From NCBI GenBank assembly GCA_001179505.1, contig CDMY01000411.1, forward strand, positions 1 through 64,000: a stretch of DNA of 64,000 nt. The letters are read 5' to 3'. Shown here one piece after another: positions 27,268 to 62,493 of this stretch (position 1 is its first letter; every line of letters begins with the position of its first letter). Origin of the DNA: Vitrella brassicaformis CCMP3155 (lineage: Eukaryota > Protista > Chromerida). Below the pieces are notes generated by a model, which was not told where the DNA came from, searched no databases, and was given only the letters and a program-made list of their open reading frames with translations. Both the position numbers and the translations under genes were made by a program.

Positions 27268-29174
27268 ATGCAGCCTTTTCCGCTCTTCCCCGTTCTCCTT
27301 CTCCTTTCGTCCTCAACTCCCATTGCGAAAGCAGATCATCCCTTCAGCGGCCCTTCTGTCAACTGGTCAACCCTGCGAGATGAGCTGAATCACCTGTACC
27401 CGCCTTTTTACCTGTCGTCATCACAAAATGGACGGCATCCTTCGGGGCTGCTCGCATCAGCCCTGGTCAAGACCGCGATAGGCACTGAAGAGGCGATCAG
27501 ATGGCTGACATTGTCAGCAATGTCAGCCGGCAACGCATCTTCCTCACTGGCGATAGGCACCTTTGCGTCGTTCCTGCTGCACGCGCTGCACGCCACGGGA
27601 GAGCAGAACAGTGATGGCAGCAGCGCCCGTCGAGTCCTGCGGGCCATTGATCTGATGCGCTCCGGTCTGCCGCTTGAAGCGCTGCTGACTTCCGGCTGGC
27701 CAGTATTCAGCATGCTCATGCATTTCCGCTCCGTGGTTGATGCGGCTGGCCTTGAGAGTGATTCAGTGTGTGCGGCGGGCAGCTGGGACCTGTTGTCTGA
27801 GGGACTGGAGTCAATCGACTCAGTTGCGCGACATGAGGGCATCTCTGTGTCTCTGGCAAATCATCTCATGGAGATGGCATCCAACATATCAGTTGTGTCC
27901 CAGGGACTCACCATAGGTGAAAGGAGCGAAATGGACACCGCTCACTAAAGAGAAAATAAGCCATATTCATTTCTCTTTGTAGGTAAGATCAACGAGTGTC
28001 CTCCAGGGTCTATGGCTGCCTTGACCTTGTGGCTCTTGGCCGCACTCGGGAGCGGTGTTCCTGACTTGCCCCGCATTCTGCAAACCTATGTTTCCATTGC
28101 CGACGCACTGTGGCAATTCATGACGATCGAACAACTCACAAGCACGCGTACAAAAGCCGACTCACATCTGCACATACCGGCTGCGTTCGTCTCTTCTGCG
28201 TCTTGTTTTGGTGCGTCCACGTGTTTCAGGTTGGCGGATCTTGGAATTGCTTCAGCTTTTGGCTGCGCAGGCACTGAAGAGACAACAACAAGGCAAGCCA
28301 TAAGCAGAGAGTCATAAGTGTTCTCATTTCCCTACTCTGCCGCAGCCGTGTCTGAGAGTGCATTCCGGGACAAATACAAAGATTGGGATGCTCAATTCAC
28401 CGTTCTGATCACGACAATTTCCAGAACACGAACGGTCAATGTCAATCGTGTGATCCAGCTGTTTAAGACTGAACCAGCTGTCCGTGAGATCATCGTCTTA
28501 TGGAACAACGGGGAACAGGTATTTTACCCGACATGCATTCGCTTAGTCCATTTTCTCAATGCCTCCAGGACCCTCCATCGTTCGCGAATTCGTCACTTGT
28601 GCCTGTGCGAGTCATTACGCAGCCCAACAAGAACATCTCGAATCGGTGGAAGGTCGCTGCTTGTGAATCCAAGACGCCGCTTGTCTTCAATGTCGATGAC
28701 GACATCGTATTCGATGTGGCTGATATTCTGCGGATGTTCCTTGTCGCCCGGGCCTATCCCAACACTGTGGTCGGAACGATGGGGCGTTTCTTTGACCTGC
28801 AATCGCGTCAGTATTCTTTCCGTGGCTGGCCCTTGTTCAATATCGTGCTGCCCGGGTTTGCCTTTATCGGTGTCGAGACGCTTCGAGAATTTGTTCACGA
28901 GCGTGAATTACTGAAGTATTTTGACGCTGACGACGCCCACTGCGACGACATCTCTCTCAACTGGTTCATATCCATCAAGAAAAACCAAACGCTGATTGCC
29001 GTTCCAGGTGTCAGGGTGGGCGATGCGCCTCAAGCCAGTGAAGCAGGCGCGCTGTCCATGCACAAGGACCGCAGGGCTCTTCGGTCGCGCTGCTGCGAGT
29101 GGATCCTTAACTACTTCCGCAGCAACCACCTAAAGTTTGGTCGCTGGGTCTCTTCTTATCCTGATGTAGCCTGA
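27268..29174 (+). CDS. Gene A: shared N-terminal domain + GT64 (EXTL2-like) glycosyltransferase
   Basis: Signal peptide MQPFPLFPVLLLLSSS. Introns at 27917-27982, 28148-28229, 28293-28345 (GC-AG) and ~28519-28568. GT64 motifs FTVLITT, IIVLWN, NISNR, VFNVDDD, HCDDISLN, RSRCC..F. Confidence 0.85.
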
Positions 29175-29594
29175 GTGAATCTCTCTGCAATACGTCACAT
29201 ACGCTACGCGCCAAGAAGAGCGTGGCCGATGTAGGCCGCCCCGATAAGACAGTAGTGAGTAAAGGAGAAACAAATGATGGCAGGAAGGGTGTTTAGAGTT
29301 GTCGCCGAGACAGTCGATGAGAAATTTTCAATCTTCGCATGGGGGACTTTTTCTCCCTCTGCTTTTCAAGTGAATCATGTTTCTGTGTGACTCAGAGGGA
29401 GCGGCTCCAAGGCATAAATGGGCCGTATCTGCATATCTCCGAAGAAAAACAAAGACGATGAAATCGCAAGCTCCTGGTAGAGAAACATGCGCAACACATC
29501 CCCCGCCTAGTTCCGAAGCTGAATCATCCACCGAGGATTCGGCTTCTCCGCGAGTGCTTTTGGACAGCATTCAGCATCGAGGATGCTGGATGCC

Positions 29595-29644
29595 CTTTCT
29601 GAGTGGACGAAGCACCGGCTTTTCGCCGCACCTCGTCGGGTAGT
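29595..29644 (+). repeat. Dispersed repeat, copy 2 of the 25434-25499 motif
   Basis: Same motif, lacking ~16 nt found in the middle of copy 1. Confidence 0.75.
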
Positions 29645-29995
29645 TTAAGTACATGTATTAATGGATGTTTGTGTTGTCGCTCATTTAAGTTCCGTGCCAA
29701 CAGTCTTTTCGTCTGCGATCAGACAATCAATGACTGATTGTGTGTCCCACACTTGCTTTATTTTGTACGGACATGTGTGATCGACATCCATACACATGCA
29801 CTCAATGACAGCTGCATTCAATGACATGGGGAGGTCATTTTGTCACTCTGCGTGCATGTTTTGCTGGCCCCTTGGAAAAATTCGCAAATAAGTTCATAAC
29901 ATGACCGCTGGACAGCTGCTCTCAGCTTGCTGTGGTAGCACATCTAAGTGGGCCTTGTCTCGGAACAGCTCACCAATTTAGACTGCAAGCAAAAC

Positions 29996-32900
29996 CTACA
30001 AAACCAGGTGAAGATGCATAGCCATTTTAGTCACCTGGTTTTGGCATGTCGAGTGACCATGCAATAATGAAACCACGTCCACGTCCCACAACCGATGTTT
30101 CATCAGGGCCCTTTTCTTCATGGCCGCCCCTTGGACCCAATTGACATGCACCATCACCACGTCCTCTCGCTCCTGTCTCGTCAAGAAGTCAGAGGGAGGT
30201 GCACTTCGCATCTTCAAAAACACCCGACCTGATGGCAACAAGAGATACTGCGCTGACATGTACTTCGAAGGAACTTCAAACCTGATGGGAAGAGCTTTCG
30301 TGAGAGACTGGCGATAGACATGCTGTTTCTGAGATGTTTCACAGCTTCATTCAGATACGACTGATTGTAAGTAATGTTGCGTCTTGTCTCCTTGTGCATC
30401 AGCTGCCCCCACTGATCGAGGAGAGAAAGCGCTCCCTCTGTTGGCCGAAACAACATGAGACATGAACAGAAGCAGTTTGCGTCGATCTGGAGGGCGACGT
30501 CGAATCGCCTGGATGGCATAAAGTCAAGCGCGTTCCTGAGCCACACCATGTCAACATCGTTGTACAGGACCGTGTAGCCTCTTTGGACAATCTCGCGGAC
30601 GAAGAATGGCCTCGTCATGACAAGAGCCCCGAACGACTCCGTGTTGAAGCGTGTGGCAGCAACAGAGACACGCACCTCCTTCGGCGCGCGAACCACATTT
30701 TCGGGGAAGCTTGTAGATAGAAGATCGAAGCACCTGTCGTCGAGGCAAATGACCAAGAAGCTGTTTACGCCTTGCCTGTGGAGGCTCTTCGCCCAGTTGA
30801 TGGCGAAATCGACCTGCAAAGCAGAGGATCCAGGTGAATGTCTAGACACTGAGACAAGTGTGAATGGCTCACCATGCCCCTGTTGACGGTCGTCATGACG
30901 ATTGTGCCATCAGAATCAGCAACCGAAGCCAGCAGGTCAGAGGAAAGCCACCCAGTGGCGGCCGGCATTGTCGTGCCGTTCCTGTCTCCCGCAATTTCCC
31001 GTCCCTCTAGGTGACGCACTCTCGTCGAGCAAGAGTCAAGCGCATCTGCGTGCCTGCACCACATCCAGCAGTCGTTGCCCCCTTGTTTTCCCTTGCTCAT
31101 CACGACACCCCACAGCGGACCGAAGAGGCCCTCTGGGGGACAGTCCGGCTGCATCACAGGGATGACGTCATGAATGTCGGCTGGGTGACTGCACTGGAAG
31201 AGCCTCAAGAAGGCCGCAAGGGCCTCCGTCCTGTTGGTGGGCAGCTTGACGGCAGAAGAAGAGCCGATCCTGTCAAAGCCGCTGGGCAGGAGGAAGGCAG
31301 CGTAGCCGTTGGGACGCAGGACCCTCTCAATCTCTGTTTGAGTACTCACACACATACAAACGCAAGCCTAGGGATTCAAGGGCGGCTCACCGGCAGCGAA
31401 GCTGAATGGACAGTGTGTGCGGTCGAAGACATTGGCAAAAACGAAGTCGAAGGTGTGGTCTTCGAAGGGCAAGTTATGCATGTCGCCCCTGACCACCAGT
31501 GGAGGCCTCTCCACCAGATCGACACCAATGGCGTGCCGCACGCCGGCTTGGTACAATGCGCGCACCTCTTCCCCTGTTGACGCGCCAATGCTGAGGGCAT
31601 GCGAGTCGCGCGTGAGGTAGCCGGCAGACCAATAGCGATCAAACAATCGCACATGCATGTACCTATAACCAGACCAACTACAAGGGTCAACACCTCGAGA
31701 CAAACAAGCGGCGTGCATACCTGATCCACTCGAGCATATCGACGGAGAGCTGTCCTGAAGCGTGCTGCCCACCTAAAATACTGCTTCTCACGTCGGCGCC
31801 CTCCTCCTGTGTGGCGACGTATTCGTCTTGCGCGCTCCCATTCACGGACGCATTGAGGTGGCTGCTGAGGGCAGACTGACACATTTCCGTTGTCTTTCGG
31901 GCTGCCTCCCGGCCGATGCTCTCTCGTTGGCTAATGGAATCCATGATAAAGCAGCTATCATTGGCGACACTGGGACGCAGGAGACGCTGGGCATCAAAAG
32001 AGGGCGTCTCTTGTGGACTCGTATATCGCTTGTCCGCCCTCCAGATGTGTAAGCACTCGTCGGCCGCACCGTCGAGGTCGTGTAAAACTGACATATTCCT
32101 GAGGAGAGGCAAGCCATTTCCGATGATATATCTGCCTAGATCCCCAGCTCACCTTTGGGTATGGTCAGTATGGAGAATATCGAGGAGGTCCAGCACGGGC
32201 CACTCTGAGACAAACAAGGCATGCCAGCCGGTCAGCCAAATACAGTTTTAACTTACTGGTGCTCAGTAAGGTCCGCAGAGGGATCTGCCTGATGATGTCT
32301 CTCAACGCATCTACGAGAGTGATTTTTCGGTCGACATTTTGAACCATGGCTGCCGAGATGAGGGCCAGCGGGCACTTGTCAAAATAGCGAGGGGCGTCTA
32401 CGGGAGAGAAAGAGACACTCTGCCTTTCAGCAATCAGATCCTCTGTGGGCCTCCGTGTACCTTTGGTGACCTCCCGGCCGAGTCGAGCCACCTCATTTGC
32501 ATGCTCTCGCAGAAGGGCCGCTGGCGGCTGGCCACCACTCATTTGCTCTTGCCATGTGCTTACAAGTGCTATGAGAGAGCTGTAAAATGTGCGAAGTGCT
32601 GAGGACTTGTGAAAGAGAGGACAGTCGTTCGAGTCAATATCAGGGAGGCCCTCTTTCAACAGAGCAAGCATCCTAAACAAGAGACAGAACAGATCAGGGA
32701 AGGCATCGGTCCTCTGCGCTAACCTGACGATTGGCCATGTTGTGTTGAGTATGTGGGAAGCGAGACCCAATTGGTCGTACATCTCGTCGAGCTCAGCCAG
32801 GGCGTGTGACATGTACTGCTCGAGGGACGCGATGACAGCGTCATTCTGAGGCGGATGGACGGCAAAGAACAGTCGTGCCACGAAGACAACCACGGGGCTG

Positions 32901-33235
32901 TCAGGTTCCTGTGAGATCGAGTTCCAGTCTGTCGATTCAATAGTATTACGTCGAAGGATCTTCGCACTTTCTCTTGCTGCGCATCCAAGGGACAGCTGCC
33001 TGTCAAACAAAGCAACCCCCTCTGATTGAATGCCGGTTGAATAGTCGGCTATATTGTGGACTGCGTTTTTTTGTTGGCGGACACTGAGTCTCTGCCAAAG
33101 GGGAAGGGTCTGGCTGGGAAACAGTTGCTGGAGATGATCATGGAGAAGTGAAACATCAAAAGATTGGTTGGCACACACACATGATCCTAGGGCTCCAATA
33201 ATGAGGACCACTCCGAGTTTGGCATGCATCATCAT
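29996..33235 (-). CDS. Gene D: shared N-terminal domain + class I SAM methyltransferase + GT77 nucleotide-diphospho-sugar transferase
   Basis: Signal peptide MHAKLGVVLIIGALGSCVCA. MTase motifs ALSIGASTGEEVRAL, GVDLVERPPLVVRGDMHNLPFEDHTFDFVFANVFD and EIERVLRPNG. GT77 motifs GYTVLYNDVDMVWLRN, NQSYLN, LFPSG and VHVNWVQG..K. Confidence 0.85.
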
Positions 33236-33960
33236 GATGATCTACTTCACGACCCCCCAAAGCCGGGGGAGTGCTCTAGGCTAGTTTTTCCGACCGCGAA
33301 TCGCATAGTGATGTGAGGGCGCATGTAGCGCGGGGGGGTCTATGTGTATGTCTTGCCGCCCTTCTGGTTGCCTTGAAGTTCTTGTTTTTCCTGCGGTGAT
33401 GATATTATGTGTATGGGCGTGCTCTTGGGGTGTCTACGAATCGGCTGCCTGCCGCCCCTCTCCGGTGCGCTCGAATTTCATACACCCCTTTTGTTGCCGA
33501 AAAATGCGCTCGGCACATCACATTGACTGGTTGATTAATTGATTGGTTCATATACGTATCATCCCGACTGTCTGTCTCTGTGAATGAATGTCGTGCCTCT
33601 GCCGACACTGTCTGGCTGTTTGTCTGGATGAATTATGTATGCATGTCTCTATGTGTTGTGTGTAACCTTATGTCTGTCTTATGTGTGCGTGCGTGTATGT
33701 GTGTAAGTGTGAAGGCAAATGGACTGTGCGGACAATACAAACGAGTGTTCTCCACTTCGATGTGTGAAGGACATTGGTTTGTGATTCAACGGGTTGCAAC
33801 CCAAAGTTTCTCCTCCTTCTTTTTGGCGGCTTTTAAAATGGTTCCGTTTTGTTTGTCAGATTTTTCAAATTTCTCCTCAATTTCTTATTTGTTTGCGTTG
33901 TTTTAAATATTTCTCGGCGTCGGCTTTGGGACGTTTCAGGGGAAGAGGCTTGCACGGGGT

Positions 33961-34072
33961 GGACAGGCAGGACAGGGCTCAGCAGCGACGGGATGTCCGG
34001 GCTCTGTCCGGGCTGGCTCGTCGTCCGGGCTCGACGAGCGAGCCCAGACACATGGGTAGCGGAGGCGAGAGT
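33961..34072 (+). repeat. Dispersed hairpin-containing element, copy 2 with an internal expansion
   Basis: Aligns to 27050-27135, with extra TGTCCGGGCTGGCTCGTCG-type sequence inserted. Confidence 0.8.
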
Positions 34073-34681
34073 GTCCAGAATTGCTAACAGAGGTACGTGG
34101 AGCTGTCAGTTAGGTCCTTTGTCCAGCCCGTGAAACGGCTCACCTCTCAGTCAACTCTCAGTGCGCCTTTTGGCTCTATCGTCGCGGCCTTAATTACGTT
34201 GCGCCGCAGCGTTTCGGGTGCCAACGTTATTGCGCGAAGCAGCATCGCGCGAAGCAGCACCGCGCAAAGCCGCGTGTGTGCATTCAGAACAGCGGAACGA
34301 TCGTTGGGGTTCAAAGGTCCACGACACGGTGTTTGCATGGAAGTATGCGGAGTCTTCTCCCTCGTGGGACCGGTGGGTCCCGGGCGGACGAGCAGACAGA
34401 AGGCATTGGTGTCGCGAAATGCGAAGGAGAACTCCACGATGATAAAGGCGTCGGACTGTCGTAACGAGACGATGTTGCGTCAAAATTGGGAGCCTCGGCG
34501 TGGAAAAACAGAACGAAGGTGTGTTGTACATGTGCGTCATGGCGACGTCAGTCAAGACAGTACGGGCGCCGACTACTACCGATGCCAACAGCCTACTTCA
34601 AAGCAATTGAAGGAGGCGTTGTTGAAGTAGGCTTTGTTGACTGTTGAAGCATGAGAATCCTAGGAGGCGTTGTTGAAGTAC

Positions 34682-34932
34682 CACGGCGTCCGAACGAAAG
34701 GTGAAGACTGGTCGGATGGAAAAAACGAGGTGATATTTTGCGACTTGACGCTCGTTCGACATGATAAAAGCAGAGGTGCGTATTATGTCCACGATTGGTG
34801 AACCAGATCAGTGTCGTTGTACACGGTCTCCGAACCAAAGGTGTAGACTGGTCGGAATGGGAAAAACGAGGTTACAGTTCGCGACTTGACGCTCGTTCGA
34901 CATGATAAAAGCAGAGGTGCTTATTATGTCCA
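34682..34932 (+). repeat. Tandem duplication with 140-bp period
   Basis: Copies at ~34682-34791 and ~34822-34932 share the identical 40-mer GCGACTTGACGCTCGTTCGACATGATAAAAGCAGAGGTGC. Confidence 0.85.
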
Positions 34933-35562
34933 ATTGATTATGTCCAAATCCTCGTTCTCATACGTTCCTGCGTTGTTCGCTTACGGCAATGTCGTCTACA
35001 CCACTTTTTGGCACTCTCCGATGCCGTGGTGGACCGTTACCCAGCCTCTCTTTCGGCTCGAGCCCATGTCTCATCATTCTTGAACACGAATACAATACCT
35101 TGCGGCGGCGCGTTGAAACCAACAATCGGAGTGTGTCGGCTCACTAGGAAGAATACGGTGCATTTCGGCCAAATGCCGCACTCGGCGCCATTCTTGTACA
35201 ATTGTTGGTTTCAAACAAGTGGTGGACCTACATGTGGCGTGTGGCTCGACCATCTGCGCGCTTCGTCCTGGTCTTGGTGGATGATCGAGAAAATGGGGTG
35301 TCTGATGCTCAGCCGTTCCCCGAAACGGTGAGCGATAATGGGAACGCCTCAGCAGCGACCCGCGGTGTACCCTGATGAGTCGTTTTCGTGGCTTCCGAAT
35401 GCTCCCCGCGACGAGGAGACCTTGCGCAAGACGGTTTTAGGAGCTTGGAACTCATCGCTATTGCCAGTTGCAAGGCATGATTGGGTCCTGTTGCAGCGCG
35501 AACGAGTGTGGCTAGGGTCGGTCGCAAAAGTTGTGGTGGAGGTTAAGTCAACGCGAGCGAAT

Positions 35563-38160
35563 ATGGAGCGTGTAGGATTATTCTTCTGTATCCTCACTGT
35601 TTTCCTTCCTTTCCTCTCCGCGCTGGACAGCCATTTCAGTCCGCGGGACGAACTCCGTCAGCTGTACCCGCCGTTCTACACTCGTGGAAATCACAGCTCT
35701 TCCGAGCTGCTCGCGTCAGCCCTTGGCAAGACCACAACGGGCGCCGAAGAGGCGGTCAGATGGCTGACATCCGGCAACGCATCTTCCCCACTGGCGATAG
35801 GCACCTTTGCGTCGTTCCTGCTGCACGCCCTGCACGCCTTGGCAGAGCCAGACAACGGTGACAGCGCCCGTCGAGTGCTGCGCGCCATCGATCTGATGCG
35901 CTCCCGTCTGCCGCTTGAAGCGCTGCTGACTTCCGGCTGGCCAGTATTCAGCATGCTCATGCATTTCCGCTCCGTGGTTGATGCGGCTGGCCTTGAGAGT
36001 GATTCAGTGTGTGCGGCGGGCAGCTGGGACCTGTTGTCTGAGGGACTGGAGTCAATCGACTCAGTTGCGCGACATGAGGGCATCTCTGTGTCTCTGGCAA
36101 ATCATCTCACGGAGATGGCATCCAACATATCAGTTGTGTCCCAGGGACTCACCATAGGTGAAAGGAGCGAAATGGACACTGCTCACTTAAGAGAAAATAA
36201 GCCATATTCATTTCTCTTTGTAGGTAAGATCAACGAGTGTCCTCCAGGGTCTATGGCTGCATTGACCTTGTGGCACTTGGTGGCCGCACTGAGGAGCGGT
36301 GTTCCTGACTTGCCCCGTATTCTGCAAACCTATGTTTCCATTGCCGACGCACTGTGGCAATTCATGACGATCGAACAACTCACAAGCACGCGTACAAAAG
36401 CCGACTCGCATCTGCACATACCGGCTGCGTTCGTCTTGTGTTGGTGCACGTGTTTTAGGCTGGCGGATCTTAGAATGGCTCCAGCTTTTGGCAACTCAGG
36501 CGCCGAAAAAACAACAGCAAGGCAAGCCATAAGCAAAGATTAGTCTTCGGTGGTCCCACTTCTCCCTGCTCTGCCGCCCAGCCATGCCGCCCAGCCATGC
36601 CTCGAGGCAAGAGAGGTCCCGTGGCGTGTCGATCGACCAGTCAAGTGGGACTCACTTGGAATCGTCCTGCAGCAGATCCTGTTCGGCCTCGAATGGAACC
36701 TGTTTCCTTGGCACCTGTCTGTGCTTCCCGGGCAAGTCGTAAAATCCCCACATGTTCTTATCTGGCAATTTCTCTGTTGGCAGGCTACACAGGTCAGAAC
36801 TGCAGTCAGATGCTTGAGGGGCACACAAAAGAGTGCGGTCCATATGTAAGGCGCCCGGGAGGGTATACACTGGGAGTTAGGGCCGCGTACCATGGGGAGA
36901 CATACTCTGGGTCTGTGGATCTGTCAGGACGATCGATGTTGTTTCCATCCTGATTACGGCGTGGCGCAAGTACCGTGCTCGCGATGGCGCAGCGCACAGC
37001 AGTTCGAGAAAACGACTTGGTACCTGAGAAAGACTGACCACGACCGAAACTTGCAACACGCAGCGAGCTACGACAACTACCGCAGTTTGCCTGCCCAATT
37101 GGGCAAGGTGCTTGAGATGGGTTGTGGTCCGTTCACCCAGCTGAAGACACTCCTGGATGCGCGGCCGGATGTGACGGTGGAAAGCATTACGTTGGCGGAT
37201 CCACTGGCGTTTCACTATATGGATGGCGTAGAAAAATGTTCGTACCGCGAAGGCACGTTGAGAGGTTGGCCAACCCGCGTGATTTCGTTGCCGAATGAGT
37301 ACCTCTCCCTTGAAGAGCGGTTCGATACGATTGTGATGATCAACGTCATTGAACATGTCATCGATGGCCTTACTTTGTTGCACAAGGCATTCTCGTTACT
37401 CTCTGACGGGGGAGTCTTGGTTTGGCATGAGAAGCTTAGGGACTCGTACAAGGGCTCGGCAATACTCTGCGAACAAGACGGTTGGCATTCATGCGGTCGA
37501 GAATTCGATTTGCATCCCATCCGCATCAAATCGAGCTTGGCAGACAGGTTTGTTGATTTATTCGACAGCTTGTACGACGAGCGGAATGCGGTTGAAACAC
37601 GAAGAGTGCGCAGCTTCACGGGCGCCGGCGGCATTTACTATATTGGGCGGAAGTTAGGCACAGGACGTCCACACCCTCCTCACTTTCCCTACGAGAGCGG
37701 CTGCATCGAGTCGCGTATCCCTCGTCTTGTCTCCATTGTAATTTACGCCGCGAAAGAAACCTCTCCAACTGGGGCTCTCCAGGAGACGATAAAGACATAC
37801 GTCGAGAGCGTGTTGGTTGATCGGGTCGTTCTCGTGTTCCGTGCAGGGCAACAGCTGCCTAAGCTGGAACGTTTTGCATCAAAGCTGATTCTCATAGGAG
37901 TTTCGTCGCCGGAACGCATTGATGTTTTCTACAGGCAAATTGCGGCTTCGTTGTCTCTCGACCCGGTTCTTTTGTCCCCCACCGACTCGTCAGCACTCAA
38001 CGACGACGAGCTGATCGAAGTGTTCCGCGCATTCAACAATGGTCTGGCCGGAAACCGAGCTCGAGGTGCTCTTCTGGTCCACCGCAAGGAGATGACTGCC
38101 AAAACCGTTGAAACTCTTCTCCCCGGACTACACTGTGCTGTTCTCGGTGTCTGCCTTTGA
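35563..38160 (+). CDS. Gene B: shared N-terminal domain + EGF-like + class I SAM methyltransferase + degenerate GT64-like domain
   Basis: Signal peptide MERVGLFFCILTVFLPFLSA. Spliced EGF-like CSRSCSASNGTCFLGTCLCFPGYTGQNC. MTase motifs VLEMGCGP, FDTIVMINVIEHV and LLSDGGVLVWHE. The tail resembles the start of gene A's GT64 but lacks DDD. Confidence 0.8.
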
Positions 38161-38199
38161 TGACACCCGTGCGAGACAGATCGTCCGGCATTGACAGGA

Positions 38200-39560
38200 C
38201 AACAACCGAGACAGCAACTCGTGCAGCGATACCTCATGCCTAAGTCGGTGATTTCTCTGCTGTTTCTCCTCCTTTTCGGATGGAGCGTGTGTCGGACTAT
38301 TCCCAAATCCCCTGAGAATGCAAACTAAGAACTCGCATCCAGCGACCCTCGTGCCCGCGAGACGGCGATCATGGACTACGATCGACACTGCTGCAAGGAC
38401 TTGCGGCATTAGAACGGAAACTACAGCAATTTTCCAGCCTTTCGGATGTGTATCGCGTTGAAAGGCTAGTGGAGAGACAGCAGTGTACATCAGGGGAGTC
38501 AACGTACCATCAGTCGGTCAGTCGCTTATGTATGTGGCCACATACACAGTGTCCACATACACATGTCTCCCTCCATGGTTGGTGTGTGTACGCCATGAAT
38601 GACTGTGTGCGCTTCCTGCGCATGGACGTGTCGACATGTGCGCCCAAGGAAGAATCAACATGCCCAAGGTCGGCCCTGTCTGACCTCTCACAGCATGTGT
38701 CTTCTGCCAATCAATCAGCCCCTTAGCGACTTGTATGTCAGATCCAATCCCTTCTGCACCGGCGTAGCCACGCACATCATCACATCATCTTCTGTGTCAG
38801 GCACTGTGCCCATGAGATGATCAAGCGACTCTCGATCGATCTCAGCAGGTGCTACAGAAGCATCGCGGTCAGCTGAGGCAATCGCTGCTCTGTCGCACAC
38901 CAGACATCTCATCGAGAAGACCTGGCTCAACTCCTAGAGGGGGATCCCCTCTCACACTTGTCCAGCACGTACAGAGACGGTAGTAGCGCTCTCATAAGGT
39001 CGGCTGTGGACAGAGAGCGGATGGGTGGGAAACATACACGGCATCATGATGTTCGTGTGTCAGGTTTCTGAACCGGAAGGTCAAGGACAAGAACCCGAAA
39101 CAAGCATGTCTACTGGGTGCCTTCAGCCAAGTTTGTGTTGGGGACGGGCAGTTGTCGAGCGACATTATTCATTGATTGGTGTATTGAGTGCATGACTGTC
39201 GACACTTATCGGCTGCCTGCGCGACATACACCGCTGGTCAACAGTCGCTGCACTCTGTTGGCCTGGAACTGTGCGTCCCGAAGCATGTCACTGGCCGCCG
39301 ATGCAAAAAGCATCGCACGAAATGTATGCGCTTTCCATTCATCCGGCGGATCACTAAATGGTACGTCGGTTGATGTCACGAAAAGGTGCGTCGCTTTCTC
39401 CATGGCCAGTCTCACTGGGTATCGCTTTTTCCTCCTCGAGTGCGCGAAGACGACCGCGACTGCTTCGTCAGGCGAAAGGTAGCCGCTTTTGGCTGCGGCT
39501 CTTTGTCGGATGTCGTTGCAACAGTGATGAGGTCCCGTACTAGTCTATGGACACAAACAA
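38200..39560 (-). CDS. Hypothetical multi-exon gene, boundaries unresolved
   Basis: Open exon-like frames (AKSGYLSPDEAVAVVFAH..., AEIDRESLDHLMGTVPDTEDD..., WKIAVVSVLMPQVL) flanked by GT/AG. Confidence 0.3.
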
Positions 39561-39605
39561 GATATGGATGTCTTGCCCTGTCTGCTGGCTGAATGGAAGA
39601 CTGGC

Positions 39606-42277: not shown

Positions 42278-42605
42278 TCCTTCCTGAAATTCCACTACAT
42301 GCAAAGTGGGGGCCGAATGGGATTAAATTATGCGCCGCACACTTGCAAAATTGCACGTGTGCCGGTGCCTGTCGATATGTCTGCGTGCGTGCATGCTCCT
42401 GGCTGCGCTCAAGTGATTTGTGTCGCTCGAGAGAATCGCCCACTCATATGCGCTGGCTGGACAGCTCTATGCTTTTCACCTCTCGTCAGCTCGTCCCTAT
42501 GACACATCTTGCAATGCACACATACATGTCTGGCTGCCTGCAGCACCTGGGCTGCTCCACTGACATGGCTCCAATCCGGATGCCCCTCTTCTTTGTCCGG
42601 ATTGA

Positions 42606-46323: not shown

Positions 46324-46399
46324 GACGACAAGACACACAGACACTAGACCAGCGTAGAATACCATAACCATGATATCCAGCACTTACACGTGCTGCCGA

Positions 46400-52722: not shown

Positions 52723-52907
52723 CACGCTCTGTGCATGCGGCTTTGTACAGTGAGTGTGCATGCGTGTCAAAGGACACTTGTGTATGATACTCACGGCATC
52801 AATTCCGAAGAATGTACGCAACGAATGGTGAATCATTTTTGTGTCGGCAATCGACGGACGCATGCAAGACAAAGAGGAGAGCGACAACACTACATATATA
52901 TATTCGC

Positions 52908-55814: not shown

Positions 55815-55864
55815 CTGTGATTTCCTCGCGGCCTGCTACCCCTGTGAGCCTCCAGACCCCGCAG

Positions 55865-55890
55865 CCTGAACCCTAACCCTGAAACCCTAA
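55865..55890. promoter_or_regulatory. Telomere-like (A)ACCCT(A/G) motif cluster in the 133-bp TRM1 / RS-gene bidirectional promoter
   Basis: CCTGAACCCTAACCCTGAAACCCTAA lies between ATGs at 55814(-) and 55948(+). Confidence 0.5.
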
Positions 55891-55947
55891 CATCCCACGG
55901 CCATCTTCTGTGCGAAAGCTGTTCAAGCTCGGAAATTGCAGGAACGT

Positions 55948-57678
55948 ATGTCGAAGTTCGTGCTGAAGCAAGGTACAAGTAGATGCTGTTTGGACGCTGG
56001 TATATTCACCTGCACAAGGACATCGAACCTGCATACGAACCTGCACTACAAACTCTGACCGTGTCCGTGCGTGTCCTTTGTATGCAGGTGACGCACCTCG
56101 ACAGCGAAAGGGAGGATTTACTGCTGCCGAGCAAGTACAACAACAACAAAACTCTCTCTCTTCTGCACAGACAAACTTCTGTTACCGTATCAACCTGTCA
56201 GGCGGCTGCACTGTGGCGCCAAGAGCTCGAGGCAAAAGAGAAACTCAAGGAAAAAGCATCATCGCAGCGACCAATCGTAAGCACACGGACGTCGCATATA
56301 CGTGCAGCATGTTCACACCGCTGTCTGTGAGTCACACCCAGGATGACGGGAAGAGGCGTCGGAAGAAGCGGAAGAAGGCCAAGCGGCGAGACGATGACGA
56401 TGGCAGCGACCCCGACAGACGCTCCCGCAAGAAGCGGCACAGGTAGATAGCAGACCCTCCACTGTCACCATTCACTGACAGATGTGCATACGTGTGTGCA
56501 GGTCACTGAGCCCATCATCGTCATCCTCGAGCAGCGGTGAGTCGCCAAAGCGGCGGCGAAGGGACAAGGCGTCACCACCGACGCAAGATGGCGGAGGCGG
56601 GAAGGAGGGAGGCCAGAAGGACCAACCGCAGATAGAGAAGTGGGCAGGTAGGTATGTGTGCAGCACGTGCTCGCAGAATGGACTGGTCCATGTGTGCTTT
56701 CATTTGTTTGTTCAGAGAGCATTCAGCAGCGGAGCCTGCCCGCCAACCCCCTGGCCCGAATGTACCAGGCCACCACAATGAGCCTCGTGCAGCAGCAGCA
56801 ACACATGTAAGTGCATACCAACACAGTGACACGTATACGCGCTTAGGGTACACTTACACATGTGAGTGCAGGAAGAAGCAGGAGCAGCACGCCGAGAAGA
56901 GCCCTCCACGAAAGGTGCACGGCATTCGTGCGCTTACAACCACAGTGGCCCTTACATGCATGCCCGAACCGGTGCATGTGTGCAGGAAAGGGCATCTCGC
57001 CGGTCGTTGTCTCGGTCTCGGTCCCCTTCGCCGTCTCCCCTTCCGCGAGATCCCGTCAACCCGCTCGATGCGGCGTACGACAGGAAGGCCTATCGCAGGC
57101 AAGTGGCAAGTGTGCACCCATCCAGATAAAGATCCGTCTGTATAGCACATGTATGCACGTGTATCTTCACTATGAATGCGCGTAGGCTGAAGCGCGAGAG
57201 GAAGAGGCGCGGATCGCGGTCGCCGAGTGGCGGGAGGCGCGACCCATACTGGGAACACGACAGGTATGCAGCGATACTCGTGTCGAGTGTGCACATGACA
57301 TGACACACGTGGGTGGGTGTAGGTATGTTGAGCGTTCGGAGAGCCCCGAGCGGGAGAGGACGGAGGGGCCGATGTGGGATACCAGGAAGGGATCGTGGGT
57401 CAGCAAGGCAGGGGGCGTGTACATCCCGCCAGCCGATGGCCGTGAAGGTGAAGGCGGCGACGACCAAGAGCCAGCAAGATACATGTGGGCACCGCACGCG
57501 TCACCACGAAAGACGCGCGTACACACATGGACGTCATCATGTGTGTGTGGTTCTCTCGAGCAGCAGGCGAGCCCACCGTCCCCGCGGTCGTTCTCGTTCT
57601 CCCTCTCCCCGTCAGCGTGATAGCCCCGTGTATTCCCCCTACCAGAAACCCATGGAAGAGCCCAAGTCACCCGACTGA
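55948..57678 (+). CDS. Arg/Ser/Lys-rich nuclear protein, possibly splicing-related
   Basis: Exons encode KRRRKKRKKAKRR, RSLSRSRSPSPSP, RDPYWEHD and GSWVSKAGGVYIPP. Confidence 0.55.
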
Positions 57679-58006
57679 CTTCCGTCTGCCTGAGAGTGTC
57701 TGTATGGGCTGTGTCTGTATGTGTGTGGCGGACCTTCTGCCCCGATCGATTGGTGGTGAGGCCGGACGCTCGATCAATCGCATTTCCATACAGAGGGGCA
57801 GAGACGTTAGTTGTTTCCGCCAGACATCCCCATACAAATATCATCAATCGCCACACAGAATCTTCAATGTCAGGCAGCATGCCACTCAGTCAGTCAGGAA
57901 CGGAAAAAAGGCGTCTACACTCACCTCTCCCTCCAGCTGATCGATCAGCGATAGGACGATGGAACAAGGACGTGAAAGGGTCTTTGAATGCCAGCCACTA
58001 CCATCC

Positions 58007-60265
58007 TTAACCTGCTGGTACGCGCCTGTTGCTGCCATAGCGCATGGCCATTTCATGGAGCTCGTTCATGCGGTCCTTGGCGTTGTAATGGTACAACAGA
58101 GGAAGAGGCATGTACTCGTACACGTGCGGCTGCAGACTCTCACGCAGAGTGGCCTCACTTAGATACCTGACATGCGCACAGACAAACGCGTCATGTGTCT
58201 CGGAGACACTGCACGTTTGTGTAGGCTCATGCACATTACCATGGATAGACGCCTTCCAGCGGCACCATCTTCAGAGAAGGAATGTTCATTCTACGGGCCA
58301 TCTGAGACACCGTAACGTCGTCTGTCATGCGGCAATCCTCGTTTGAAAGGTGCATGAACTCCTGCCGAAAGCTGCGGTAGGTGGTCTTGTTAAATCCCTC
58401 CACCATGAGACGGACGAGAGATGAGCTCATGATCCACCCGCCGCCACCGCACACGCCATAGTCGCAGTTGCCCGTCCCACACGCGAAGATGGCAAACAGC
58501 GTCGGGATCGAGGGGTCGTGGTCGGCAAGGAACCGCTGCACGTTGTCGGGCAGCACATATGCGTCGTCATCACAGAACAGCACCCAGCCGAAATAGCCAT
58601 TGGTCTGGCTGATGAGGTTGGCAGCCACTTCGATGCTCCCGGCCGTCACACAAACTTGAGACGTGAAGCTGCTCACTTGTTCTGCAGTGTTGTTCACACG
58701 AGGAATTCTCGCGAACAGGTCAGAAACTGTTGACATATAGGCAGCAAGCCAACAAGCCATGGTTGCGAGCGGGCGGCGCAGAAGAGAAGGCGCCTTTCCT
58801 TCTACTCACTTGTGGTGCACTCCTCTATCACGATCATGTCATCATGCCCGTCACCGTGGCCCTGTCCGACGAATAGAATCAGCTGGTCGGTCCTGTTGTG
58901 GGCGACTGCCGCATAGGTGGACCGAATGAGGGGCACGCGAGTGCTATAGAATCGTGGCGCCGTACGGTGGAGTATCAACACAGGCGGATAGGACGAATGA
59001 CCTGACGAGTCTCCTTGCGCGTCTGAGTTGGATGGAGCGGCCATCTGATGTGCGAGGCCCTCGTGTTTGTCACCTTGGTGCGGCAATAGATTGGCCCTGC
59101 AATGGCAACGACAACTTCAGACCCACGTCTGCGTGCCCGTTTCACCTTTTCTTCTGTTCTGTGATTTGGGACTGCTCGTAAAGGACCGCAAGTAAGCCCA
59201 AAATGTCCCAATCTGCCAAGCATGTCAAGCATGCATTCGTATGACGTGTCTCATCCACATACATTCGTATTACACGTGTACCCGTCAGGAGCAGGTCTCT
59301 CAGCCGCAGCCGCCCTATGAAAGCTATCAGCTCGTCATCGGGTGTAAAACCGTCTGCACGTTGGATCAATAGTGCAGTCACAAAGGCCGAAGGGCAGCGC
59401 TCAAGATAGCCAGCGCCATCTGATACCAGAAGATAGCTCCATTTTCCTTACACACAGAAGAGGGCCTGCACTCACTCACCCTCTGTGACAGCCAAGGAGG
59501 CATTGAGGGCCCTCACATACGTAACAGGGGCCCACGCACTCATCGTTGCTGAAGTTCGGTCCTCCTCCTTCGCCTTTTGGAGATCGACAAGCAGTTCAGA
59601 AACTGCGCGATGTAAGGATGCAATCACTGCACTGGCCGACAAACAATCGTCGACGTGCAACCCGAGGTCAGCATTTCGCACACGTGTGCGAAGCGCACAA
59701 AGCATCCTGCAAAAAGACAAGAAATATTTGAGCTGTGTTTTGCTGCTTAAAGACCTGAAGATGGGCCACGATGTCCTATCAGGTGAGACAGACAACAGCC
59801 AGCCAGCCAGCCAAAGAATGGCGCGATGGTGCATGCCTATCACCTGAAGAGCCCTATAACGCCTACTTCCTGGAACAGTGACCTGAAGACCCCCTTATCG
59901 CCTACTTCCTGGAACAGCGCATCCAACTCCGCAGATAAAAGAAGCATGCCATAAAGAGCGCCCCGATGTGCTTGGGCCAGGACGTACATACAAAGAAGGG
60001 CAGCGAGTTTCCTCTCTCTTGTCTGTCTGTTCGAGTTTTTCTCTGGACTTCGCGACCGCAGTATCTGTGTGCTTTCCCTCATGGCATTTCCCAGCGCCAT
60101 CTTTCTGTATATGTCACCGTCCAAAGTGGTGTTGTGTTTTTCATGTTCGTAAGTGCAGAGAAAGAATGTGCGAGGAAAGATGGTGTGAAGGCTTGAAAGG
60201 AATCGGCTTGAGACGAGAGAAGAGCAGCCTGATCCGACGACGAGAAAAGTAAACGCTGTCCCCAT
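58007..60265 (-). CDS. Gene E: shared N-terminal domain + GT31 Fringe-like glycosyltransferase
   Basis: Hydrophobic start MGTAFTFLVVG. Domain motifs LHTIFPRTFFL, SWPIFRSL, YLERCPSAFVTALL and LLLTDWDILGLLAVL. GT31 motifs ILHRTAPRFYSTRVPLIRSTY, WVLFCDDDAYV, CGGGGWIMS, TDDVTV and LLYHY. Confidence 0.8.
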
Positions 60266-60563
60266 CCCCGAAGAAAAGAAAAAACCTTCTCTCTTTGTTT
60301 TCGACATGCATCTCATTCCACTCGCCTCAGGAGCTTGTGGAATTTACGACGGACAAAAGTGCGCGGTGTACCCTGATGAGTCGTTTTCGTGGCTTCCGAA
60401 TGCTCCCCGCGACGCGGAGACCTTGCGCGAGACGGTTTGAGGAGCTGGGAACTCATCGCTAGTGCCAGTTGCAAGGCATGATTGGGTCCTGTTGCAGCGC
60501 GAACGAGTGTGGCTAGGGTCGGTCGCAAAAGTTGTGGTGGCGGTTAAGTCAACGCGAGCGAAT

Positions 60564-62493
60564 ATGGAGCGTGTAGGATTATTCTTCTGTATCCTCACTG
60601 TTTTCCTTCCTTTCCTCTCCGCGCTGGACAGCCATTTCAGTCCGCGGGACGAACTCCGTCAGCTGTACCCGCCGTTCTACACTCGTGGAAATCACAGCTC
60701 TTCCGAGCTGCTCGCGTCAGCCCTTGGCAAGACCACAACGGGCGCCGAAGAGGCGGTCAGATGGCTGACATCCGGCAACGCATCTTCCCCACTGGCGATA
60801 GGCACGTTTGCGTCGTTCCTGCTGCACGCCCTGCACGCCTTGGCAGAGCCAGACAACGGTGACAGCGCCCGTCGAGTCCTGCGGGCCATTGATCTGATGC
60901 GCTCCGGTCTGCCTTTGGAAGCGCTGCTGACATCCGAATGGCCGATTTTCAGCATACTGGTGCATTTCCGCTCCGTGGTTGATGCGGCTGGCCTTGAGAG
61001 CGATGCGATATGTGAGTCGAATGGCGCCTGGTCATATCCGTGGGATGTTCTAATCGAGGGTTTAGAATCTCTCATCGCAATGGCTCGACGTGAGGGCATC
61101 ACTATTGCCGTGGCGAGCCATGTGCAGATCATCAAGATGGGATTTCATCTATCGATGGCGTCCTCCTCTAAGACCTTAGGTCATATAGTCGAGTCCTGAG
61201 TGACACTTGGACGTTCTTGCCGTGATTTTCAGGTGACATGAGCTCATGTCCTTTAGGCTTCATGGCCGCTTTGACTTTGTGGCTTTTGACAGCAGCATTT
61301 GTCAGCCCGATGCTTGATTTGCCCGACATACTGCAGACGTATAAGTATGGAACATTTGGACATATAGGTGCCCTGTGGAATCATTTGAGGATCGAACAGC
61401 TCATCAGCAAGCGTTGGCGAGTCCTTGAGCTGCTTGAGCTTGTGTCATCACAGTCGCTCGAGAGGGAAGACAGGGAACGCAAGACCAGGAGACAACAGGG
61501 TAAGTGGGACAGAAAACCCTATAGTGCTTCCATTTCCCCTGGTCCCCTGCCGTGCGCTCAGCCATGTCTCCCAAGCGTGCCAACCACTCGAGTGAGGTGA
61601 TTCCGAGACGAGGCCTCTTCATTTCGGTGCTGACGTACAACCGCCCCCATTCCCTCGTGAGGCTGCTAGAATCCCTCTCTAGGTCACACTATCTCGGTCA
61701 TCGTGTGGACCTGCTTATCTCGGTTGACTTGAATCGTGACGGGCTCGTCCACAGCGAGACGCTTCGGGCGGCCAAGTCTTATGAGTGGCCGCACGGCAAG
61801 CTCACAGTGCGGTTGAGGGAGAGGCACTATGGATTGGCTGAGCAGTGGATCCATGCAATTCCCGAAGACAGACTGAAGCAAGACAATGGCACTGTCCTTC
61901 TCATCCTGGAGGACGACATCGAAGTGTCTCCGTTCTTTTTTAAGTGGCTCCTCAAGGCCCACGCAGCGTACGGGACGAGGGAAGATGTGAGTGGATTCAC
62001 TCTGCAACGGGCAATCTTTCGAGGCGACCAGCGACGCTATCATGGGAAGCACGTGAGTGTGCATCAAGGTGTCTTTCTTTATCCGCTTGTTGGGACCATC
62101 GGATACAGCGCGTTGCCAGTGGCGTGGCAGCGATTCGTTCGATGGTACGCTTCGCTTCGGGTAGACGGTCGCTCTGCACCGCTGGTGCCTCACATCATCG
62201 CTACGCACTACCTTCTTTCCCTCTCTCAACGCAATACCTCGATTTTGACATCATCCTCTTCGTGGGGCTCAACAGAATCTGCTCTCGATTACTTCAATCA
62301 CATTCATGGCCTCTACTGTGTCTACGGTAATGCGCCGGACTACATGACTCTTGCTGCGCACCACCACGAGCCAGGAGAGCACTTCTCGTCCAGAAAGATG
62401 GATGCGCTTCCTCTGCCTAAGTGGCAAGACGAATGGTTCGTTTTTCCTGACCCGCCGGTCGTACTTGGCACCGATGGCGAACCGATCCAGTGA
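60564..62493 (+). CDS. Gene C: shared N-terminal domain + GT2-like (GT-A) glycosyltransferase
   Basis: Same signal peptide as gene B; introns at ~61179-61232 and 61500-61561. Motifs VLTYNRPHSLVRLLESL, WPHG, GLAEQW and LILEDDIEVSPFFFKWL. Confidence 0.85.

What the first reader, a model, noticed from the sequence alone, without database searches (positions are those of the whole stretch)
27268..62493. One unassigned luminal N-terminal domain fused to five different glycan-modifying catalytic modules
Seen: genes A (27268+), D (33235-), B (35563+), E (60265-) and C (60564+) all begin with a signal peptide and a ~300-aa helical domain with colinear motifs. (1) LNHLYPP / LRQLYPP / LQQLFP / LHTIFP. 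(2) GWPVFSML / EWPIFSIL / TWPIVRL / SWPIFRSL. (3) INECPPGSMAAL / MSSCPLGFMAAL / FDKCPLALISAA / LERCPSAFVTAL. (4) After splicing, LTSTRWRILELLQLL / LISKRWRVLELLELV / LLSTKWPVLDLLDIL / LLLTDWDILGLLAVL. The C-terminal modules differ entirely: GT64 (A), MTase+GT77 (D), EGF+MTase+GT64-like (B), GT31 (E), GT2-like (C). Knowledge: these families build or decorate glycans in the Golgi, usually on type II TM anchors rather than a shared soluble domain. Inference: the domain may be a common docking, oligomerisation or acceptor-binding adaptor that assembles soluble enzymes into a modular glycan assembly line, e.g. for cell wall polysaccharide. I recognise no family for it.
Basis: partly seen in the sequence, partly recalled or inferred. 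Interest (0 to 1): 0.92.

Follow-up and report, generated by a model that had tools for sequence, protein, structure and literature searches.

The report
Orphan N-domain shared by glycosyltransferases
Five neighbouring genes of the alga Vitrella brassicaformis really do start with the same previously undescribed helical domain, placed in front of different sugar-transferring or methylating enzymes; what the domain does is still unknown.

Summary
The window is the first 64 kb of Vitrella brassicaformis contig CDMY01000411.1. RNA contigs and transcript-derived proteins show that genes A, C, D and E each encode one polypeptide. Each has a hydrophobic N-terminus, a 260-300 aa all-alpha domain, a polar linker and then catalytic modules: GT64 (A), a weak GT-A/GT2-like domain (C), methyltransferase+GT77 (D) and GT31/Fringe (E). 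B's fusion to EGF+methyltransferase is only predicted, and its "GT64-like" tail is not supported.

A/B/C are recent recombinant copies (88-96% DNA identity). D and E are deep paralogues. A sixth Vitrella protein, P0008 (CEL99550.1), links the groups: BLASTP E=3e-9 to A and 1e-7 to D; hhalign P=2.7e-9, probability 96%. Shared intron positions agree.

The domain has no match in Pfam, PDB sequences, PDB folds or the ESM Atlas. A profile search of 1.84 billion proteins found only Vitrella proteins. The one outside lead is a Foldseek hit (E=0.019, probability 1.0) to the N-terminal region of another GT77-domain protein.

Conserved positions are almost all hydrophobic, plus two Cys. This points to a non-catalytic luminal scaffold or structured stem, spread by intron-mediated shuffling. 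A docking or retention role is plausible but untested. Interest is moderate.

The parts
27268..29174 (+). Gene A: signal-like N-terminus + N-domain (27268-28292) + GT64. Exons 27268-27916, 27983-28147, 28230-28292, 28346-28518, 28569-29174.
   Evidence: RNA joints. The spliced translation equals the MMETSP complete transcript protein P0002, 551 aa. Pfam GT64 5.8e-31. Matches to PDB EXT2/EXTL2 at 3.5e-15.
29944..33235 (-). Gene D: N-domain (33235-32153) + long linker + SAM methyltransferase + GT77 (Nucleotid_trans); 930 aa. Introns 32673-32723, 32398-32460, 32205-32256, 32099-32152, 31663-31720, 31334-31390, 30814-30872, 30229-30281, 29983-30034.
   Evidence: Nine minus-strand GT..AG joints occur in the RNA run X1 and not in the DNA runs. 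The ORF is continuous. The NCBI model of 789 aa already joins the C-terminal part of the N-domain to MTase+GT77.
35563..36521 (+). Gene B N-domain (introns 36158-36223, 36392-36458). It is a chimera: the 5' part is 96% identical to C and the 3' part 91% identical to A.
   Evidence: P0001, the 278-aa NCBI model, maps here. Self-blastn shows the chimera. Exons are more conserved than introns, and B-C codon changes are 10 synonymous to 5 nonsynonymous.
36522..38160 (+). Predicted continuation of gene B: linker, EGF, Cys-rich stretch, SAM methyltransferase and a weak GT-A-like half. Predicted introns: GC..AG 36522-36581, GC..AG 36732-36783, GT..AG 36846-36927. Total about 755 aa.
   Evidence: Sequence only. 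Splicing recreates a perfect six-Cys EGF consensus (CSRSCSASNGTCFLGTCLCFPG|YTGQNC) and keeps the frame open to 38157. Pfam gives Methyltransf_23 at 4.6e-9 and EGF_Teneurin at 6.8e-4. There is no RNA or database protein support.
58007..60265 (-). Gene E: N-domain (60265-59146) + linker + GT31/Fringe-like domain. RNA-supported introns: 59707-59754, 59420-59479, 59097-59145, 59023-59073, 58727-58809, 58167-58239. One 5' intron within 59844-59990 is unresolved. A 69-nt phase-1 intron at 59213-59281 is putative.
   Evidence: RNA joints, frame analysis and Pfam Fringe at 4.7e-6. The D-E N-domain comparison gives z=19.
60564..62493 (+). Gene C: N-domain (60564-61499) + basic linker + GT-A-type domain (weak GT2/GNT-I similarity); 604 aa. 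Introns 61180-61232 and 61500-61561.
   Evidence: An X1 RNA contig spans 60971-62452 with the 61500-61561 splice. The transcript-derived P0010 shows SSSKTLG|DMSSCP spliced. P0007 covers the same part. Pfam E is about 0.02.

Best explanation
Shown:
- The ~260-300 aa region is one homologous, all-alpha protein domain. It is so far found only in Vitrella brassicaformis, in at least eight loci: A, B, C, D and E here; P0008/CEL99550.1 and P0006-P0009/CEM02313.1 on other contigs; and the fragment P0005.
- It always sits at the extreme N-terminus behind a hydrophobic ER-entry signal.
- A polar or basic linker follows it, and then GT-A-fold glycosyltransferases (GT64, GT77, GT31, GT2-like) and/or SAM methyltransferases.
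- An intron lies at or just after the domain's end in all five genes.
- The A-B DNA homology stops at the acceptor of that intron. The B-C homology includes 200 bp of upstream sequence.

Inferred:
- The cassette (promoter, signal and N-domain) has been moved in front of different catalytic exons by intron-mediated recombination or segmental duplication.
- The domain is a non-catalytic luminal module, a folded, disulfide-stabilised substitute for the usual unstructured stem of Golgi glycosyltransferases.
- It would retain and/or co-assemble otherwise soluble enzymes in one secretory compartment, by self-association or by binding a common partner or acceptor. The enzymes could then act on the same, probably methylated, glycan.
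For: - Homology.
- Shared intron positions: after WP[IV][FV]x in C2, D and E; before the CP motif in all; phase 1 at ST[RK]|W in A, B and D.
- One transcript per gene: P0002 complete ORF, P0010, RNA joints.
- Lineage restriction: a profile search of 1.84e9 representatives gave 7 hits. The five looked up by exact sequence and P0001 are recorded as Vitrella or come from unlabelled JGI contigs.
- No known family: Pfam, PDB sequences, Foldseek PDB, VIA-align best Z 6.8, which is within helical background, ESM Atlas, Swiss-Prot models.
- All-alpha prediction: 11-13 helices, pLDDT 59, pTM 0.57.
- Conserved columns are L/I/V/F/W/P plus an invariant Cys-Pro and a second Cys next to a conserved Asp. 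Only the N-terminal segment is strongly hydrophobic.
- Purifying selection on the duplicated copies: exons 93% versus introns 84% identical; 10 synonymous to 5 nonsynonymous changes.
- Recombination boundaries lie at the intron and upstream region.
- The best structural neighbour is the N-terminal region (residues 37-291) of a 528-aa Nucleotid_trans protein, A0A7J6L1I0. This suggests N-domain+GT77 is the older architecture.
Against: - No experiment or computation here addresses localisation, cleavage, oligomerisation or binding.
- The structure model is of low to moderate confidence, so a missed enzymatic or carbohydrate-binding fold cannot be excluded.
- Two Asp columns (A residues 165 and 244) are conserved and could be functional.
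- With about one intron per 250 nt, an intron near each domain boundary is partly expected by chance.
- Type II anchoring by the N-terminal segment (18 hydrophobic residues in B/C) would remove the need for a retention domain.
- B's fusion is unproven.
Confidence: 0.5

Rival explanations
1. Acceptor- or glycan-binding module ('reader-writer'). On this reading the N-domain binds the nascent polymer or a carrier protein and presents it to whichever catalytic domain follows. It would act like the lectin or stem domains of some animal glycosyltransferases, rather than mediating enzyme-enzyme docking.
For: The same domain sits on enzymes with different chemistries. This is what a shared-substrate binding module predicts. 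There are two invariant Trp positions and conserved Asp columns. Unchecked scan notes report other N-terminal binding-type modules on Vitrella GTs, such as a CBM42-like + GT77-like fusion.
Against: No similarity to any Pfam carbohydrate-binding family. Known CBMs and lectin domains are mostly beta-rich, whereas this domain is predicted all-alpha. Conserved positions look like a buried core.
Confidence: 0.2
2. Structured stem of ordinary type II membrane enzymes. On this reading the N-terminal hydrophobic segment is an uncleaved signal anchor. The helical domain is then only a lineage-specific spacer or dimerisation stem with no sorting or assembly role, inherited by duplication.
For: B/C have an 18-residue segment with hydropathy 2.13 and D has 1.81. 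The position equals the CTS stem of Golgi GTs (established knowledge). A/B/C similarity is simply recent duplication.
Against: A, E and P0008 have short h-regions followed by small-residue -3/-1 patterns typical of cleaved signal peptides (sequence inspection). A mere spacer would not keep about 45 conserved columns across paralogues at 20-25% identity, nor show purifying selection.
Confidence: 0.15
3. Pro-domain or intramolecular chaperone. On this reading the N-domain assists folding or keeps the enzyme inactive, and is removed by a Kex2/furin-like protease at the basic linker.
For: The linkers directly after the domain carry di- or multibasic sites in A (LKRQQQ), B (PKKQQQ), C (RERKTRRQQ), C2 (RERRRYRE) and E (EQKKR).
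Against: D and P0008 lack a clear dibasic site at that position. A 260-aa pro-domain shared by unrelated catalytic folds is unusual. There are no proteomic data.
Confidence: 0.07
4. An unrecognised enzyme domain, for example an alpha-helical hydrolase, lyase or transferase, which would make these proteins bifunctional.
For: There are 11-13 helices and two conserved acidic columns. A weak VIA-align match includes an (alpha/alpha)6 rhamnosidase region at Z 5.3.
Against: That Z is far below the helical background. No Pfam, PDB or Atlas hit was found. Few polar residues are conserved. One of the two Asp columns is gapped in D.
Confidence: 0.05

Closest known systems
Cytoplasmic-transmembrane-stem (CTS) region of type II Golgi glycosyltransferases and the 'kin recognition' model of retention
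   Same: It has the same position (N-terminal to a GT-A catalytic domain, behind a hydrophobic ER-entry segment, followed by a flexible linker). The proposed role is also the same: retention and co-assembly of enzymes of one pathway.
   Different: CTS stems are short, poorly conserved and largely unstructured, and they differ between enzymes. Here a folded, 260-300 aa, conserved all-alpha domain with two conserved Cys is shared by enzymes of four or five families. At least some members look like cleaved soluble proteins.
Accessory non-catalytic domains of animal GTs, from established knowledge: the POMGnT1 stem domain, the ricin-type lectin domain of ppGalNAc-transferases, and the EXT1/EXT2 N-terminal coiled coil
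   Same: These are non-catalytic modules fused to a GT-A domain. They bind glycan or mediate hetero-oligomerisation and so direct where the enzyme acts. A's catalytic domain is itself EXT2/EXTL2-like.
   Different: Each of those modules is tied to one GT family and has a known fold. None is all-alpha with these motifs, and no sequence or fold similarity was found.
AlphaFold DB cluster representatives A0A7J6L1I0 (528 aa, 'Nucleotide-diphospho-sugar transferase domain-containing protein') and A0A812M7X1 (600 aa)
   Same: They are the best structural neighbours: E=0.019 with probability 1.00 and TM 0.42, and E=0.2 with probability 0.92. The match falls on their N-terminal residues 37-291 and 35-245. 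In the first this is an N-terminal helical region in front of a GT77-type domain, as in genes D and P0008.
   Different: The profile search did not detect them by sequence. The query model is only pLDDT 59. Their sequences could not be fetched, so motif conservation is untested. From memory only, the accession ranges suggest Perkinsus and Symbiodinium.
Dockerin/cohesin modules of cellulosomes (analogy only)
   Same: One small shared module is attached to many different carbohydrate-active catalytic domains, and it assembles them on a common scaffold.
   Different: That system is bacterial and extracellular, Ca-binding and about 70 aa, and it acts in degradation rather than synthesis. There is no homology, and no scaffold partner is known here.

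Membership tests
Any curated protein family for the N-domain (Pfam-A 2025; PDB sequences) | Significant HMM match over the N-terminal 300 aa | tested here: not met
   There were no Pfam hits at E<=0.1 on the N-domain ORFs of A, B, C and D, or on full-length P0002 and P0008 outside their GT domains. A profile built from alignment A3 against PDB sequences gave only noise, E=0.11.
Known structural fold for the N-domain | Foldseek or VIA-align match standing above background | tested here: inconclusive
   The model has pLDDT 59 and pTM 0.57. Foldseek against PDB gave a best E of 0.74. VIA-align gave a best Z of 6.8 to generic helical repeats, below the stated helical background. Atlas TM was <=0.32. 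Swiss-Prot models gave probability <=0.47. Only uncharacterised AFDB entries stood out.
GT64 (Pfam PF09258) - gene A catalytic domain | HMM match above the gathering score, with relatives among solved EXT/EXTL enzymes | tested here: met
   108 bits against a 21.3 cut-off, E=5.8e-31. EXT2 and EXTL2 chains match at E 3.5e-15 and 8e-14.
GT64 - gene B C-terminal region | HMM match above the gathering score over the whole domain, including the DXD region | tested here: not met
   11.4 bits against a 21.3 cut-off, E=0.19, covering only the first 105 of 245 profile positions. BLASTP to A's GT64 gave E=0.009, with A's DDD aligned to DSS. tblastn found no second half downstream.
GT77 / Nucleotid_trans (PF03407) - gene D | HMM match above the gathering score | tested here: met
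   85.5 bits against a 22 cut-off, E=6.7e-24.
GT31 / Fringe-like (PF02434) - gene E | HMM match above the gathering score | tested here: met
   26.6 bits against a 21 cut-off, E=4.7e-6, on the exon ORF 58236-58760. Only profile positions 60-114 of 250 are covered by that piece.
GT2 (PF00535) - gene C | HMM match above the gathering score | tested here: inconclusive
   15-16 bits against a 23.3 cut-off. The paralogue P0006 hits GNT-I at E=0.014. There is no PDB sequence relative. It is probably GT-A fold, but the family is undetermined.
Class I SAM-dependent methyltransferases - genes B and D | HMM match above the gathering score | tested here: met
   B: Methyltransf_23, 36.7 bits against a 27 cut-off. 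D: Methyltransf_11, 28.5 bits against a 21.2 cut-off.
Type II (signal-anchor) Golgi glycosyltransferase architecture | Uncleaved N-terminal TM helix of about 17-22 residues, then an unstructured stem | tested here: inconclusive
   Hydrophobic N-termini are present in all members. A, E and P0008 have short h-regions with small -3/-1 residues, while B/C have 18 residues. No signal-peptide predictor was available. The stem position is occupied by a predicted folded domain.

The most novel reading that the evidence does not exclude
The domain is a dedicated luminal sorting and assembly module. It would be a solution to Golgi enzyme retention that differs from the type II membrane anchor. It would hold soluble glycosyltransferases and methyltransferases of one pathway together. 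It would also be older than Vitrella: ancestrally attached to GT77 enzymes in myzozoan alveolates (the structural hits), and then spread to other catalytic modules by intron-mediated exon shuffling that is still visible as 88-96% identical cassettes.
Probability: 0.2. Interest if true: 0.8.

Novelty: new variant of a known kind. Interest (0 to 1): 0.55.

Why it matters
Golgi glycosyltransferases are usually kept in place by individual membrane anchors and poorly conserved stems. A single conserved, folded domain shared by enzymes of four or five unrelated catalytic families would be a different way to co-localise a glycan pathway. The locus also offers an unusually clear snapshot of domain shuffling in a eukaryote. 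The same promoter+signal+domain cassette is found at 88-96% identity in front of three different catalytic exon sets, and one breakpoint lies at an intron.

Vitrella is a free-living relative of apicomplexan parasites, so its wall and glycan machinery is of comparative interest. There is also a practical consequence: the public gene models here are truncated or missing (A, B, D), and the family is absent from domain databases. The impact is limited because the domain's function is untested and the family is so far confined to one non-model species.

Tried and rejected
- Direct BLASTP of B's N-domain ORF against the raw ORFs of D and E was not significant, E 0.07-7. This was partly because tiny in-frame introns pollute the ORF translations. 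It was resolved only after splicing and with the bridging paralogue.
- Word-indexed homologue searches with the B and D N-domain ORFs found only A/B/C-type Vitrella proteins or nothing. The length filter excludes long proteins.
- The same search with B's methyltransferase ORF found only distant metagenomic MTases and no Vitrella transcript protein. A 755-aa full-length B would have been just outside its length window.
- The first AlphaFold run, with a 6-row alignment, gave pLDDT 42 and was unusable.
- ESM Atlas feature searches with P0001 and the P0008 N-domain gave only noise, scores 0.71 and 0.56.
- An HMM of the domain against six-frame translations of the window and loci L002/L003 found no further copies beyond A-E, P0008 and C2.
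- A multi-pass membrane domain was considered and rejected. Only the N-terminal segment, plus one helix in C alone, exceeds hydropathy 1.6.
- A mis-assembly or pseudogene explanation for the A/B/C similarity was considered and rejected, because transcripts exist and substitution patterns show constraint.
- Pfam scans of large ORFs between the two gene groups and of the ORF at 62746-63712 gave nothing. Literature searches found no description of this domain.


Full report
**Source and gene models.** The window is the first 64 kb of Vitrella brassicaformis CCMP3155 contig CDMY01000411.1. P0001, the NCBI protein for gene B, maps at record position 35563, which equals the window position. Vitrella is a chromerid alga related to apicomplexans.

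Public RNA-derived contigs (runs X1, X2) laid on 27240-33239 and 57300-63299 show many 48-83 nt joints. These joints are absent from the DNA runs X3 and X4. All resolve to GT..AG, and one to GC..AG at 28293-28345. Several of these tiny introns are in frame, so raw ORF translations contain intron-derived residues.

Splicing gives these products:
- A is 551 aa and is letter-for-letter the MMETSP 'complete' transcript protein P0002.
- D is 930 aa, through nine introns.
- C is 604 aa. An RNA contig spans 60971-62452 with the 61500-61561 splice. The transcript-derived UniRef protein P0010 shows the predicted 61180-61232 intron removed (SSSKTLG|DMSSCP).
- E is about 610 aa, through six RNA-supported introns. 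One further 5' intron is unresolved and one 69-nt intron at 59213-59281 is putative.

In A, C, D and E the N-domain and the catalytic domain therefore lie in one reading frame and on spliced RNA. The NCBI models are truncated. A is modelled as 349 aa, D as 789 aa, and B as a 278-aa N-domain-only gene, with nothing annotated at 36533-38660.

**Gene B.** The A-B DNA homology (27521-28343 versus 35765-36577, 91%) runs through the GC..AG intron that follows the N-domain and stops at its acceptor. B keeps the same GCAAG donor at 36522. Three predicted introns keep the frame open from the N-domain to 38157:
- GC..AG at 36522-36581.
- GC..AG at 36732-36783.
- GT..AG at 36846-36927.

The second splice recreates a perfect six-cysteine EGF consensus across the junction. 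The downstream ORF has a clear SAM-methyltransferase domain. The EGF/MTase part has no signal peptide of its own, so fusion to B's N-domain is the most economical model.

I have no RNA or database protein to prove this. The last 170 residues resemble only the first half of GT64. Pfam gives E=0.19, BLASTP to A gives 0.009 with DDD aligned to DSS, and no second half lies downstream. 'GT64-like' is therefore not supported.

**Is it one domain?** A, B and C are recent copies. B is a chimera, 96% identical to C over 35361-36003 (including 200 bp upstream of the ATG) and 91% identical to A over its 3' part. This confirms the earlier scan note s1-231245.

Direct comparison of A/B/C with D/E is only marginal:
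- BLASTP E is 0.07-0.17 on raw ORFs.
- Smith-Waterman z is 5-6 on spliced domains.
- hhalign gives P=3.7e-4.

D versus E is clear (z=19, P about 1e-11).

A profile search of 1.84 billion representatives with an A/B/C/D/E alignment returned only seven proteins. The five looked up by exact sequence, plus P0001, are Vitrella records or unlabelled JGI contigs. One hit is the 1163-aa CEL99550.1 (P0008), on another contig. Its residues ~90-430 carry all four motifs (LLQLYPPF, TTWPILRLL, LACPLGSATAL, SSGWPIFELLL).

P0008 bridges the two groups:
- z is 19 to A and 18 to D.
- BLASTP gives 3e-9 to A and 1e-7 to D, on overlapping P0008 residues.
- hhalign of {A, B, C, C2, A2} versus {D, E, P0008} gives P=2.7e-9, probability 96%, over 155 columns.
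- Moving P0008 to the other side still gives P=6.6e-8.

Intron positions agree:
- After WP[IV][FV]x in C2, D and E.
- Just before the Cys-Pro motif in all members.
- Phase 1 at ST[RK]|W in A, B and D, and putatively in E.
- At or just after the domain end in all five genes.

The five N-domains are therefore homologous. In this window they represent three deep lineages: ABC, D and E.

**What the domain looks like.**
- Pfam finds nothing on it.
- A profile search against PDB sequences finds nothing.
- With an 11-row alignment, AlphaFold gives an all-alpha model of 11-13 helices, with pLDDT 59, pTM 0.57 and pLDDT 70-83 for residues 70-140 and 220-278.
- Foldseek against the PDB has no hit below E 0.7.
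- VIA-align gives at best Z 6.8 to generic helical repeats, within the stated background for helical models.
- The ESM Atlas and Swiss-Prot models give nothing.

The only outliers are in the AlphaFold DB clusters:
- A0A7J6L1I0 is a 528-aa 'Nucleotide-diphospho-sugar transferase domain-containing protein'. It is matched on its residues 37-291, with E=0.019, probability 1.00 and TM 0.42.
- A0A812M7X1 is 600 aa and is matched on residues 35-245, with probability 0.92.
- All other hits have probability <=0.21.

The best structural neighbour is thus again an N-terminal region in front of a GT77-type domain. That is unlikely to be an accident. It suggests a wider, fast-evolving family whose older architecture is N-domain+GT77, as in D and P0008. 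I could not fetch those sequences, so this stays a lead. From memory only, the accession ranges suggest Perkinsus and Symbiodinium.

**Conservation pattern.** Across A, C, C2, D, E and P0008, about 45 columns are conserved. Nearly all are L/I/V/F/M/W. The exceptions are two Pro, an invariant Cys-Pro, a second Cys beside a conserved Asp, one further Asp and a Gln. Mature A/B/C N-domains contain exactly two Cys.

Only the N-terminal segment is strongly hydrophobic (1.3-2.1 over 19 residues). One internal helix reaches 1.9, in C alone. N-glycosylation sequons are present.

After duplication the copies stayed under constraint. A-B exons are 93.3% identical and introns 83.7%. B-C has 10 synonymous against 5 nonsynonymous codon changes.

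This is the signature of a folded, probably disulfide-bonded, non-catalytic luminal domain. It is not an active site, a membrane domain or a decaying duplicate.

**Mechanism.**

Shown:
- One homologous N-terminal cassette is attached to GT64, GT77(+MTase), GT31, a GT-A/GT2-like domain and (predicted) EGF+MTase. With P0008 there is a further GT77-like+unknown architecture.
- An intron lies at or just after the domain's end in each gene.
- One recombination boundary lies at an intron acceptor and another lies upstream of the promoter-proximal region.

Inferred:
- The cassette spreads by intron-mediated recombination.
- It functions as a structured stem that retains and/or assembles these enzymes in one secretory compartment, or presents a common acceptor.

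The partner set comprises retaining and inverting GT-A enzymes plus methyltransferases. This is what one would expect for a decorated, methylated wall or glycoprotein glycan, but the product is unknown.

Rivals are an acceptor-binding module, a mere type II stem, a cleavable pro-domain (dibasic sites follow the domain in A, B, C, C2 and E) and an unrecognised enzyme. None can be excluded with these tools.

**Context.** Unchecked notes of this scan list many other modular GT fusions and GT-rich neighbourhoods in this genome. Accessory modules on GTs therefore seem to be a genomic theme. No paper describing this domain was found.

**Verdict.** The domain is unassigned and, by sequence, confined to Vitrella. 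The functional interpretation is reasonable but untested. It is a new domain family filling a known kind of role, the accessory or stem module of secretory glycosyltransferases. It also gives an attractive example of ongoing exon shuffling. Interest is moderate (0.55), not 0.92.

Noticed in passing
window 27874-29174, 29944-32812, 35563-36532, 36533-38660: The public NCBI gene models are truncated or missing. A is modelled as 349 aa (true length 551), D as 789 aa (true length 930), and B as a 278-aa N-domain only. A spliceable EGF+methyltransferase coding region at 36582-38157 is not annotated at all.
   Followed up: partly
window 28293-28345; 36522-36581; 36732-36783: GC..AG introns with a GCAAG donor. 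The first is RNA-supported and the two in gene B are predicted. Gene predictors that demand GT donors probably ended B's model at the first one.
   Followed up: partly
window 36569-36594: A 13-nt tandem duplication (CCGCCCAGCCATG x2) at B's predicted acceptor creates two AG acceptors 13 nt apart. Only the first keeps the EGF frame.
   Followed up: no
window 28933-29294: A 360-nt skip with one inserted G is seen in both RNA and DNA runs. It is therefore a structural variant, allele or paralogue rather than an intron. It would remove A's last ~80 codons.
   Followed up: no
window 34678-34791 and 34819-34932: A direct repeat of about 115 nt at 89.6% identity in the D-B intergenic region.
   Followed up: no
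window 59796-60029: RNA contigs match only the ends of this stretch of gene E and diverge in between. This indicates an expressed E-like paralogue elsewhere in the genome. No E-type protein was returned by the profile search.
   Followed up: no
window 62746-63712 (-): ORFs directly downstream of gene C have an N-terminal hydrophobic segment and a Rossmann-like stretch (…LVVDNAEREPY…). There is no Pfam hit. It might be another membrane-anchored modifying enzyme.
   Followed up: partly
L002 10001-14301 (CDMY01000283.1) and L003 9686-11468 (CDMY01000323.1): Further family members lie on other contigs. P0008/CEL99550.1 has the N-domain, a weak Nucleotid_trans match and a ~400-aa unknown C-terminus. 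The C-like paralogue CEM02313.1 has an NCBI model (374 aa) that lacks the first part of the N-domain present in the 568-aa transcript-like protein P0009.
   Followed up: partly
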